From Macrostomum lignano (taxonomy: Eukaryota), in assembly GCA_002269645.1 (NCBI GenBank), contig NIVC01000632.1, positions 186,001 through 250,000 of the forward strand: a DNA stretch of 64,000 nt, written 5' to 3'. How positions within the stretch are numbered: the stretch's first letter is position 1; every line of letters begins with the position of its first letter. The notes below the pieces were generated by a model, which had not been told where the DNA came from, did no database searches, and saw nothing but the letters and a program-made list of their open reading frames with translations. Both the position numbers and the translations under genes were made by a program. Of this stretch, positions 14,264-15,495 are shown piece after piece.

Positions 14264-15495
14264 CTAGACCGAACGCCTGGCCCGCTTCCTCCTCTTATAG
14301 TAGTCCTCATCCTCGTCCTGGTCGTCCTCCTTCTTCCTCCGGCCGAAAAATTCTTGGTCCAGGTTGGACTCGATGTCCTCGTCATAGAAGTCCATGTCAC
14401 CATACTTCTTCTTCCTGTCGTAGTCCTCCTCGTATTCTTCATCTTCCTCGTCCTCCTGTCGCTTCTTCCTCCTGTCCTCGCTCTCCTCCTCCTCCTCCTC
14501 CTCCTCCTCATTCTCCTCTTCTTCATCTTCCTCATCATCCTGTCGCTTCTTCCTCCTGTCCTCGCTCTCCTCCTCCTCCTCCTCCTCCTCCTCATTCTCC
14601 TCTTCTTCATCTTCCTCATCATCCTGTCGCTTCTTCCTGTCGTAGTTCTCCTCATCCTCTTCATACTCCTCTTCTTCATCTTCCTCGTCGTCCTGTCGCT
14701 TCTTCCTCTTGTCGTAGTTCTCCTCCTCCTCCTCCTCTTCCTCATACTCCTCTTCTTCATCTTCCTCATCGTCCTGTCGCTTCTTCCTCCTGTCGTAGCT
14801 CTCCTCCTCCTCCTCCTCCTCCTCATACTCCTCTTCTTCATCTTCCTCATCGTCCTGTCGCTTCTTCCTCCTGTCGTAGCTCTCCTCCTCCTCCTCTTCC
14901 TCATACTCCTCTTCTTCATCTTCCTCATCGTCCTGTCGCTTCTTCCTCCTGTCATAGCTCTCCTCCTCCTCCTCCTCATACTCCTCTTCTCGGATCTCCT
15001 CCACCTCTTCTTCAATCTCCTCTATAATCTCTTCGACCTCCTCCTGTTCTACTCGATTATCCTGTCGCTTCCTCCTGTCCTCGGTCTCCTCTTCCTCTTC
15101 TTCCTCCTCCTCATACTCCTCTTCTTCATCTTCCTCATCGTCCTGTCGCTTCCTCCTATCCTCGCTCTCTTCATCTTCCTCATCGTCCTCCTTCTTCCGT
15201 CTGCCAAACAGGCCCCCTTCGTCGTCCTGATCATCGTACTCATCGAAAATTGAGTCTTCCCTCTTCATATCGTCGAAGCTCGACGACATGACGCTATCGG
15301 AGTAGCCTACGTCGTAGGCTTGACGCTTGAGAGCTCGCGCATCAGACTGTAGAGGGGGGGTGCGATTTTAAGGCTACGGAAGTCCACTTTAACTCAAAAA
15401 ATCCAATTTGAGGCATTTTGATAAATTTGTCTCACCTCACGGTGCATCTGCGAGATGCAGAGCGCGATGCCCATGGCAACCAACAGAAGACGCAT
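14264..15495 (-). CDS. Secreted polyanionic multi-peptide precursor (prohormone-like), 2 exons, about 380 aa
   Basis: Exon 1 (15495-15436) encodes MRLLLVAMGIALCISQMHRE and ends at a GTGAG donor. The 89-nt intron ends CCCCCCCTCTACAG. Exon 2 (15346-14264) is in phase: SDARALKR-QAYDVGY... then repeated QDDEEDEEEEYEEEEEEEESYD-RRKKR. There is a TATAAA upstream and an ATTAAA downstream. Confidence 0.85.

What the first reader, a model, noticed from the sequence alone, without database searches (positions are those of the whole stretch)
14264..15495. Secreted precursor that could release about 10 pyroGlu-capped, Tyr-containing poly-Glu peptides
Seen: a spliced signal-peptide exon joined in phase to an ORF with 15 basic clusters (KR, RRKR, RKKR, RRKKR). 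Nine blocks start with Gln and are almost pure Glu/Asp with 1-2 Tyr, for example QDDEEDEEEEYEEEEEEEESYD. There is no Cys or Trp after the signal. Established: R-X-K/R-R fits furin/PC sites, an exposed N-terminal Gln cyclises to pyroGlu, and Tyr in acidic context is the tyrosylprotein sulfotransferase motif. Inference: this makes a batch of extreme polyanions rather than receptor ligands. Possible roles are Ca2+ or osmotic swelling of secretory granules (rhabdite-like), neutralising a basic partner, or an acid/base block coacervate if uncut. If the host is Macrostomum, it is a candidate for the proposed negatively charged release agent acting on the basic adhesive Mlig-ap1; this is speculative. 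I do not recognise the family.
Basis: partly seen in the sequence, partly recalled or inferred. Interest (0 to 1): 0.82.

Follow-up and report, generated by a model that had tools for sequence, protein, structure and literature searches.

The report
Flatworm secreted poly-glutamate peptide precursor
This is a real, transcribed gene of the flatworm Macrostomum lignano, with no relatives elsewhere, whose secreted protein looks built to be cut into two amidated acidic peptides plus about nine extremely negatively charged poly-glutamate peptides; where it is expressed and what the peptides do are unknown.

Summary
On the minus strand a 60-nt signal-peptide exon (15495-15436) joins in phase, across an 89-nt GT..AG intron, to a 1083-nt exon (15346-14264). 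The 380-aa product is 56% Asp/Glu with 16 runs of Lys/Arg.

An exhaustive search of 1.84 billion proteins found one relative. It is a UniProt fragment from Macrostomum lignano that carries exactly this splice junction and starts 27-29 nt after a TATAAA box. The fragment's automatic name, "ANP32-related nuclear phosphoprotein", has no domain support: no Pfam match even at E ≤ 10 and no PDB match.

Both ends of the protein carry an old duplicated module, [acidic Tyr peptide ending Phe-Gly]-RRKK-[11-aa acidic linker]-RRKR. The motif F-G-R-R-K-K-E-D-D is kept through five synonymous and no replacement changes. This predicts two Phe-amide peptides under selection.

The poly-Glu array looks like a recent, unstable tandem expansion of the acidic linker plus its cleavage site.

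Best reading: a convertase-processed peptide precursor with poly-Glu co-products. A bulk-polyanion or adhesion-release role remains possible but has no expression evidence.

The parts
15618..15623 (-). TATAAA box. The inferred transcription start is at about 15596-15594.
   Evidence: The database fragment P0008 starts at 15594, 27-29 nt downstream of the first T of TATAAA, although the frame stays open for seven more codons upstream.
15496..15596 (-). 5' UTR of about 100 nt with no upstream ATG. The start context is AAAAGC-ATG, with A at -3.
   Evidence: P0008's first 33 residues are the in-frame translation of this stretch, with one difference (P versus L).
15436..15495 (-). Exon 1 coding part, MRLLLVAMGIALCISQMHRE. 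The signal peptide is about aa 1-16 (15495-15448).
   Evidence: This is the only hydrophobic segment of the protein (Kyte-Doolittle 2.9 over LLVAMGIALCI), preceded by Arg2 and followed by the small/polar residues C-I-S-Q. No signal-peptide predictor was available.
15347..15435 (-). Intron of 89 nt, phase 0, GTGAGA...CTCTACAG.
   Evidence: The junction is confirmed by P0008. In-frame stops inside the intron close the exon-2 frame upstream.
15260..15346 (-). N-terminal propeptide region: SDARAL-KR-QAYDVGYSDSVMSSSFDDM-KR.
   Evidence: It has two KR sites. The second fragment starts with Gln.
15146..15259 (-). Module 1 (aa 50-87): EDSIFDEYDDQDDEGGLF-G-RRKK-EDDEEDEESED-RRKR. The predicted product is an 18-aa Phe-amide peptide.
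   Evidence: It is a paralogue of module 2. F-G-R-R-K-K-E-D-D is conserved with 5 synonymous and 0 replacement differences.
14405..15145 (-). Array of nine Gln-initiated poly-Glu/Asp units (14-38 aa after trimming, side-chain charge -11 to -21). Each ends in RRKR, RRKKR, KRKKR, RKKR or RKKK. Unit 2 (aa 115-152) is a diverged V/I-containing amphipathic helix.
   Evidence: TRF finds 81 bp x 6.8 copies at 14435-14977. All unit lengths are multiples of 3 nt. Units 7 and 8 are identical in DNA.
14282..14404 (-). Module 2 (aa 335-375): YGDMDFYDEDIESNLDQEFF-G-RRKK-EDDQDEDEDYY-KRRKR. The predicted product is a 20-aa Phe-amide peptide.
14264..14281 (-). C-terminal tail A-RR-SV and the TAG stop.
14105..14110 (-). 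ATTAAA polyadenylation signal, 154 nt after the stop.
   Evidence: This is a sequence match only.

Best explanation
This is a genuine two-exon gene of Macrostomum lignano with no detectable relatives outside the species. It encodes a secreted, intrinsically disordered polyprotein of the prohormone type.

Proposed steps:
1. Translation starts at the first AUG, and a 16-residue signal peptide takes the protein into the ER (sequence-based inference).
2. Furin/PC-type convertases cut after the 16 multibasic runs, and a carboxypeptidase trims the basic residues (inferred from the motifs; M. lignano has a PC2 homologue, PMC4490696).
3. The evolutionarily old, constrained core is a twice-repeated module, [acidic Tyr-containing peptide ending in Phe-Gly]-RRKK-[11-aa acidic linker]-RRKR.
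4. The exposed Gly is converted to an amide. This gives EDSIFDEYDDQDDEGGLF-NH2 and YGDMDFYDEDIESNLDQEFF-NH2, which I take to be the selected products: signalling or otherwise specific peptides (inferred).
5. The acidic linker plus cleavage site of module 1 has recently been amplified as an unstable 72-84-nt tandem repeat.
6. Each precursor therefore also releases about nine poly-Glu/Asp peptides of 1.8-4.8 kDa with side-chain charge -11 to -21. These probably have an N-terminal pyroGlu and may be Tyr-sulfated.
7. The poly-Glu peptides are co-released spacer-derived products. They may additionally serve as granule counter-ions.
For: Gene and transcript:
- The model was reproduced.
- An independent M. 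lignano fragment has the same junction, and its start fits the TATA box.
- There is no upstream ATG, and the only hydrophobic segment is aa 4-14.

Processing signals:
- There are 16 K/R runs, most of them R-X-K/R-R.
- Gly directly precedes a basic run exactly twice among the six Gly of the mature protein, both times as F-G-RRKK.

Selection:
- The two modules are 22/43 identical in amino acids, and half of the identical residues use different codons.
- pS is 0.75-0.80 against pN 0.15-0.27.
- FGRRKKEDD shows 5 synonymous and 0 replacement changes.

Array is young and variable:
- Units are near-identical at the DNA level.
- The UniProt fragment lacks 15 aa of the array.
- The 11-aa linker EDDEEDEESED-RRKR resembles the start and end of a unit.

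No fold and no family:
- Pfam finds nothing at E ≤ 10.
- PDB finds nothing at E ≤ 1.
- AlphaFold gives pTM 0.22 and one low-confidence helix.

Background: flatworm prohormones are cut at dibasic sites by PC2 and amidated, as shown by mass spectrometry in a planarian (PMC2953531).
Against: - No expression site, peptide or receptor is known.
- The predicted amidated peptides are themselves polyanions (side-chain charge -9 and -8), which is unusual for receptor ligands.
- About 65% of the precursor is the array, so most of the secreted mass is poly-Glu. That may be the point rather than a by-product.
- Selection evidence rests on one pair of 38-41-aa modules, with an uncertain alignment in their N-terminal halves.
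- Pressure simply to stay acidic would also lower pN.
- No orthologue could be examined.
- The signal peptide, and whether cleavage, pyroGlu formation, sulfation or amidation actually occur, are not tested.
Confidence: 0.45

Rival explanations
1. Bulk polyanion. The poly-Glu peptides, or the uncut acid/base block protein, are the functional product. They would act as a granin-like matrix that binds Ca2+, condenses basic cargo or swells secretory granules. The amidated ends would be incidental.
For: - 56% Asp/Glu, net charge about -134, and nine units that each carry a furin-type site.
- Even the end peptides are strongly acidic.
- There is no globular fold.
- Copy-number expansion would raise the polyanion dose per transcript.
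Against: - The array is young and varies in copy number, so it shows no sign of long-term constraint.
- The constrained parts are the F-G-RRKK modules.
- No granin motif or domain is present.
- No gland expression is known.
Confidence: 0.27
2. Release factor of the duo-gland adhesive organ. The poly-Glu, possibly sulfated, peptides would be secreted by releasing-gland cells. They would displace the Lys/Arg-rich cohesive protein Mlig-ap1 and so detach the animal.
For: - The published model calls for a small negatively charged secreted molecule, still unidentified in the 2019 and 2022 papers (PMC6410801, PMC9229212).
- Heparin and the small polyanion fondaparinux block attachment.
- The predicted peptides are 1.8-4.8 kDa with side-chain charge -11 to -21.
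- The species is right.
Against: - There is no expression evidence of any kind.
- The peptide strings and annotation terms were absent from the held supplementary files of the 2019 adhesion paper and of a 2018 in situ screen for seminal-fluid proteins.
- M. lignano has many secretory cell types, so the prior is low.
- Amidation sites have no role in this model.
Confidence: 0.06
3. Divergent gastrin/CCK/sulfakinin-type precursor. The products would be sulfated-Tyr, Phe-amide peptides acting on a CCK-type receptor.
For: - YGDMDF matches the gastrin/CCK C-terminal hexapeptide YGWMDF (Tyr plus the shared GWMDF core given in PMC8921109) at 5 of 6 positions.
- The family hallmark is (D/E)Y(G) plus a C-terminal F-amide (PMC6219549).
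- Both predicted peptides end in F-amide and carry Tyr in an acidic context.
Against: - MDF is not followed by Gly-basic, so it would be internal to the peptide.
- Tyr lies 12-20 residues from the amidated Phe, against 6-8 in the family.
- The C-terminal cores GGLF and QEFF do not match the GWMDF, GHMRF or GGGRF cores.
- The Pfam Gastrin model gives no hit.
- The two CCK papers read do not mention platyhelminth members.
Confidence: 0.05
4. Young gene without relatives and with little or no function. It would be transcribed, but its product would be neutral, with a minisatellite inflating the ORF.
For: - No homologue in 1.84 or 5.8 billion proteins apart from the same-species fragment.
- Purine-rich satellites that give long ORFs are common in this window.
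- The repeat is open in three frames.
Against: - The old internal duplication shows saturated synonymous divergence with conserved residues.
- The set of signals is coherent: TATA box, Kozak context, signal peptide, phase-0 splice, stop and poly(A) signal.
- All repeat-length differences preserve the frame.
Confidence: 0.1
5. Nuclear or cytosolic acidic protein of the ANP32, prothymosin or nucleoplasmin type, as the database name suggests. The K/R runs would act as nuclear localisation signals.
For: - The UniProt automatic name is 'Acidic leucine-rich nuclear phosphoprotein 32-related protein 2-like'.
- Poly-Glu tracts combined with K/R clusters occur in such proteins (own knowledge).
Against: - There is no LRR or any other domain.
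- The first AUG of the transcript opens a hydrophobic signal sequence, with no upstream ATG.
- PDB, which holds ANP32 structures (own knowledge), gives no match at E ≤ 1.
Confidence: 0.03

Closest known systems
Multi-copy neuropeptide or peptide-hormone precursors with acidic spacers (for example planarian prohormones, PMC2953531; molluscan and cnidarian RFamide precursors, own knowledge)
   Same: - Signal peptide, under 500 aa, no globular domain.
- Peptides flanked by di- or multibasic sites.
- Gly-basic amidation signal.
- Acidic linkers between cleavage sites.
   Different: - Here the amplified unit is the acidic linker plus its site, not the amidated peptide.
- The amidated peptides are present only twice and are themselves polyanionic.
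- No sequence relationship to any described precursor was found.
Granins (chromogranin A/B, secretogranins)
   Same: Acidic, disordered, secreted proteins with many dibasic sites and sulfatable Tyr, processed into peptides. The proposed granule-matrix role would be analogous.
   Different: - No granin motif or disulfide loop, and no Pfam Granin match.
- Far more acidic: 56% D/E here, against about a quarter in granins (own knowledge).
- Tandem-repeat architecture.
Gastrin/CCK/sulfakinin peptides
   Same: - Acidic stretch with sulfatable Tyr.
- N-terminal pyroGlu in several members.
- C-terminal Phe-amide.
- The local string YGDMDF resembles YGWMDF.
   Different: - The Tyr-to-C-terminus spacing and the C-terminal core do not match.
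- MDF is internal to the predicted peptide.
- No profile match.
ANP32 family (the database label of the only relative)
   Same: Long Glu/Asp tract with K/R clusters.
   Different: - No LRR domain.
- It has a signal peptide.
- The similarity is compositional only.
Polyanions of bioadhesive or secretory systems: sandcastle-worm polyphosphoserine Pc3, bone sialoprotein poly-Glu with sulfated Tyr, nematocyst poly-gamma-glutamate (own knowledge)
   Same: An extreme secreted polyanion that could pair with basic partners, bind Ca2+ or drive swelling.
   Different: - The charge comes from encoded alpha-linked Glu/Asp released as short peptides by convertase sites.
- There is no homology.
- The function is untested.

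Membership tests
ANP32 (acidic leucine-rich nuclear phosphoprotein 32) | N-terminal leucine-rich-repeat domain with an LRR cap | tested here: not met
   Pfam finds no family at E ≤ 0.01 or E ≤ 10 for the 380-aa model. P0008 has no LRR hit either.
ANP32 (acidic leucine-rich nuclear phosphoprotein 32) | Nucleocytoplasmic protein without a signal peptide | tested here: not met
   The first AUG of the mRNA opens MRLLLVAMGIALCISQ, the 5'UTR has no upstream ATG, and this is the only hydrophobic segment. Localisation itself is not testable here.
ANP32 (acidic leucine-rich nuclear phosphoprotein 32) | C-terminal low-complexity acidic region | tested here: met
   The mature protein is 56% D/E. This is composition only, and it explains the automatic name.
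Granins (chromogranin/secretogranin) | Conserved granin motifs or the N-terminal disulfide loop (Pfam Granin) | tested here: not met
   No Pfam hit. The mature protein has no Cys.
Granins (chromogranin/secretogranin) | Signal peptide, acidic composition, multiple dibasic sites | tested here: met
Granins (chromogranin/secretogranin) | Ca2+- and low-pH-induced aggregation, and sorting to dense-core granules | not testable with these tools
   Needs biochemistry and cell biology.
Gastrin/CCK/sulfakinin | C-terminal Phe-amide (Phe-Gly followed by basic residues in the precursor) | tested here: met
   GGLF-G-RRKK and QEFF-G-RRKK. Amidation itself is inferred.
Gastrin/CCK/sulfakinin | (D/E)-Y-(G) with the sulfatable Tyr 6-8 residues from the C-terminus, and a core such as GWMDF, GHMRF or GGGRF | tested here: not met
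   Tyr lies 12, 14 and 20 residues from the amidated Phe. The cores are EGGLF and DQEFF. YGDMDF is internal to the peptide. Family features are taken from PMC6219549 and PMC8921109.
Gastrin/CCK/sulfakinin | Activation of a CCK-type receptor | not testable with these tools
   Needs a receptor assay.
Prohormone / secreted peptide precursor (operational class) | Signal peptide, several mono- or dibasic sites, small size, no globular domain | tested here: met
Prohormone / secreted peptide precursor (operational class) | A Gly-basic amidation signal conserved between peptide copies | tested here: met
   FGRRKKEDD is conserved with 5 synonymous and 0 replacement changes.
Prohormone / secreted peptide precursor (operational class) | Processed peptides detected, and expression in convertase-positive secretory cells | not testable with these tools
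   No expression or peptidomic data could be reached.
Non-coding minisatellite giving a spurious ORF | Open frames explained by repeat composition alone, with no coding signals in the flanks | tested here: not met
   Three frames are open across the repeat. Only the reported frame runs from the splice acceptor through both unique flanks to the stop. It is also backed by an independent spliced model and by the pN/pS pattern.

The most novel reading that the evidence does not exclude
The convertase-released, pyroGlu-capped and possibly Tyr-sulfated poly-Glu peptides are a genetically encoded heparin-like polyanion. Macrostomum would secrete them from the releasing glands of its duo-gland adhesive organs to neutralise the Lys/Arg-rich cohesive protein Mlig-ap1 and let go of the substrate. 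That would make them the unidentified small negatively charged release factor of the published model.
Probability: 0.06. Interest if true: 0.85.

Novelty: new variant of a known kind. Interest (0 to 1): 0.5.

Why it matters
If the best reading is right, the gene adds an uncharacterised amidated-peptide precursor to the flatworm peptide repertoire. The public record has it only as a truncated fragment with a misleading nuclear-protein name.

It also shows an unusual way for a precursor to evolve. The acidic spacer, not the bioactive peptide, has been tandemly amplified together with its cleavage site. One transcript therefore delivers a large dose of short, extreme polyanions.

If those polyanions are functional, this would be a peptide-encoded way of making a heparin-like molecule. 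It would bear directly on the open question of how flatworms release their temporary adhesive.

M. lignano has in situ hybridisation, RNAi and attachment assays, and a single-nucleus atlas exists. The alternatives can therefore be separated with routine experiments.

Tried and rejected
Homology searches:
- The full-length word-indexed search found nothing.
- The exhaustive HMMER search with exon 2 gave only the same-species fragment.
- A search with the concatenated non-repeat ends gave only that fragment again.

Exact look-ups of encoding contigs:
- The 341-aa ORF and P0008 are not on record.

Species identification: a neighbouring PLAT exon gave hits of only 29-40% identity (best by E-value 32%), including rotifers and an unnamed EukProt entry. 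That briefly argued against Macrostomum. The UniProt fragment then settled the species.

Other checks on the protein:
- Pfam at E ≤ 10 and PDB at E ≤ 1 found nothing.
- AlphaFold without an alignment gave one long low-confidence helix (pTM 0.22). I did not run a fold search on it because the model is too poor to compare.
- No paralogue lies in the window. The 6.1-7.4 kb purine satellite matches at 29% by composition only.
- Codon usage against neighbouring genes was uninformative, because the repeat dominates.
- Rfam found nothing in the window.

Literature:
- The accession and the ANP32 name are in no paper text.
- Peptide strings and annotation terms are absent from the held supplementary files of PMC6410801 and PMC5977470.
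- The 2009 flatworm neuropeptide paper (PMC2749192) is not held.

Not attempted:
- Tiling primer k-mers through supplementary files, which would have exceeded the look-up cap.
- Scans of the metagenome and prokaryote genome collections, which are irrelevant to an animal gene.
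Full report
**1. What is there**

On the minus strand, ATG at 15495 opens MRLLLVAMGIALCISQMHRE. The sequence then runs into GTGAGA. 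After 89 nt, CTCTACAG is followed in phase 0 by an open frame from 15346 to the TAG at 14266-14264.

The 380-aa product has 143 Glu, 60 Asp, 42 Arg, 28 Lys and 20 Tyr. Its single Cys lies inside the signal sequence. It has no Trp, no Pro and no N-glycosylation sequon.

There are 16 runs of two or more Lys/Arg. Nine array blocks and one unique block begin with Gln straight after such a run. Tandem Repeats Finder reports an 81-bp unit x 6.8 copies (14435-14977, 89% match).

**2. Is it a gene or a repeat artefact?**

ORF length is not evidence here. The GAG/GAA-rich repeat is open in three frames. The window is full of satellites that give long ORFs, including a purine-rich one at 6.1-7.4 kb that matches the target at 29% by composition alone.

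The decisive evidence came from the exhaustive HMMER search of 1.84 billion representative proteins. It gave exactly one hit, P0008, with E = 1.6e-37 and 100% identity.

- P0008 is UniRef100_A0A1I8IM69 from Macrostomum lignano.
- Its sequence reads PGSNSNCLSDSSRFRSCPSPRFCLPNKSRQTKS-MRLLLVAMGIALCISQMHRE-SDARALKRQ....
- Its first codon is at 15594, although the genomic frame stays open for seven more codons upstream.
- TATAAA lies at 15623-15618, 27-29 nt upstream of that first codon. This is what a transcript-derived partial model would look like. I could not check how the UniProt model was built, so this step is an inference.

Other signals agree. The 5'UTR has no upstream ATG, the start has A at -3, and ATTAAA lies 154 nt beyond the stop.

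P0008 differs from the window by one residue in the UTR translation and by a 15-aa in-frame gap in the array. It therefore comes from another allele, a duplicated gene copy (homeologue) or another assembly.

**3.

The two unique ends of the mature protein are paralogous modules:

- aa 50-87: EDSIFDEYDDQDDEGGLF-G-RRKK-EDDEEDEESED-RRKR
- aa 335-375: YGDMDFYDEDIESNLDQEFF-G-RRKK-EDDQDEDEDYY-KRRKR

They share 22 of 43 aligned residues, and 11 of those identical residues use different codons. By Nei-Gojobori counting, synonymous sites are saturated (pS 0.75-0.80) while pN is 0.15-0.27. The nine residues F-G-R-R-K-K-E-D-D carry five synonymous and no replacement differences. The duplication is therefore old, and the Phe-Gly-basic site has been kept by selection.

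By the established rules of prohormone processing, Gly before a basic site is the amidation signal. The predicted products are an 18-aa and a 20-aa Phe-amide peptide.

The poly-Glu units behave differently.

- They are near-identical at the DNA level, and two neighbours are identical.
- All length differences are multiples of three.
- The copy number differs from P0008.
- The 11-aa linker of module 1 (EDDEEDEESED-RRKR) looks like a short version of a unit (QDDEEDEEEE...SED-RRKKR).

The simplest history is a two-copy amidated-peptide precursor whose first acidic linker, with its cleavage site, expanded recently as a minisatellite.

Unit 2 (aa 115-152) is a diverged copy with Val/Ile at 3-4 spacing, which makes an amphipathic helix. 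It has the best AlphaFold confidence in an otherwise unconvincing model (pTM 0.22).

**4. Relatives and families**

No other relative was found in either protein collection. There is no paralogue in the window, no Pfam family even at E ≤ 10 and no PDB sequence at E ≤ 1. Within the data I could reach, the gene has no relatives outside M. lignano.

The automatic UniProt name (ANP32-related) reflects Glu-rich composition only. There is no LRR domain, and the protein starts with a signal sequence.

The string YGDMDF and the combination of acidic Tyr and Phe-amide recall gastrin/CCK/sulfakinin (PMC6219549, PMC8921109). However, the Tyr spacing and the C-terminal core do not fit, and MDF is internal to the peptide. 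I keep this only as a weak lead.

**5. How it most likely works**

Shown:
- The gene structure.
- The independent spliced model.
- The composition.
- The constrained modules.
- The young, variable array.

Inferred from motifs and general knowledge:
- ER entry through the signal peptide.
- Cleavage at R-X-K/R-R and dibasic sites.
- Carboxypeptidase trimming.
- Amidation of the two Gly-extended peptides.
- Cyclisation of N-terminal Gln.
- Possible Tyr sulfation: 16 of 20 Tyr have an acidic neighbour and at least three acidic residues within five positions.

M. lignano has a PC2 homologue that is expressed in the nervous system and is essential (PMC4490696). Planarian prohormones are cut at dibasic sites and amidated, as shown by mass spectrometry (PMC2953531).

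I commit to this reading: a convertase-processed peptide precursor whose selected products are the two Phe-amide peptides, with poly-Glu peptides as abundant co-products. My confidence is 0.45.

It is favoured by their mass fraction and by the acidity of every product. It is weakened by the lack of any sign of long-term constraint on the array.

**6. The adhesion idea**

The M. lignano model proposes a small negatively charged molecule from the releasing gland that interferes with the basic protein Mlig-ap1. Heparin and fondaparinux block attachment (PMC6410801). The molecule was still unknown in 2022 (PMC9229212), and no later paper in the held library identifies it.

The predicted peptides, at 1.8-4.8 kDa and side-chain charge -11 to -21, would suit that role physically. 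But there is no evidence at all on where the gene is expressed. I put this reading at about 0.06.

**7. Verdict**

- The thing is a new variant of a known kind: a prohormone-type polyprotein with an amplified, cleavable acidic spacer.
- Interest is moderate (0.5). It is a real, unusual and mis-annotated gene in a tractable model animal, with one exciting but unsupported possible role.

Noticed in passing
window 38900-55750 (-): A LOXHD1-like gene made of many PLAT/LH2 domains spread over large exon-sized ORFs. The ORF at 44673-46184 carries a Ser/Arg/Asp-rich low-complexity insert of roughly 230 aa between PLAT domains. The best database relatives are only 29-40% identical.
   Followed up: partly
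window 3627-5328 (-): A leucine-rich-repeat gene with its own signal peptide ([18 protein letters not shown]). By eye it has an Ig-like segment after the LRRs (...[10 protein letters not shown]...).
   Followed up: partly
window about 34430-34580 (+): An EF-hand (calmodulin-like) exon, ...[26 protein letters not shown]..., lies directly against a long (CTGT)n array.
   Followed up: partly
window 27000-31650; also 18750-19620, 32000-32650, 33460-34420, 25030-25700: Very long (CTGT/GACA)n-type microsatellite arrays, one of about 4.5 kb, give ORFs of up to 1522 aa in several frames on both strands. They are a warning against trusting ORF length in this genome.
   Followed up: no
window 13500-13881: A (TCTA)95 microsatellite starts about 220 nt beyond the gene's ATTAAA signal.
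   Followed up: no
window 6100-7470: A purine-rich satellite with strong strand skew is open on both strands ('RRGEE'n). It matches the target protein at 29% identity by composition only, and I noted no signal exon or unique flanks around it.
   Followed up: partly
window 86-649 (+): A fragment of a retrotransposon polyprotein with reverse-transcriptase-associated RNase H domains.
   Followed up: partly
window about 15100-15190 (-) versus P0008: The UniProt fragment A0A1I8IM69 lacks 15 aa (ESEDRRKRQDDEEDE) of the array and differs at one position in the 5'UTR. This points to repeat-number polymorphism, a duplicated gene copy or a collapsed older assembly. The public record is truncated inside the array and carries a misleading ANP32-like name.
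   Followed up: partly
window 14951-15064 (-), aa 115-152: One array unit has diverged into QDNRVEQEEVEEIIEEIEEEVEEIREEEY..., with Val/Ile at 3-4 spacing. This amphipathic helix could act as a sorting or self-association element.
   Followed up: no
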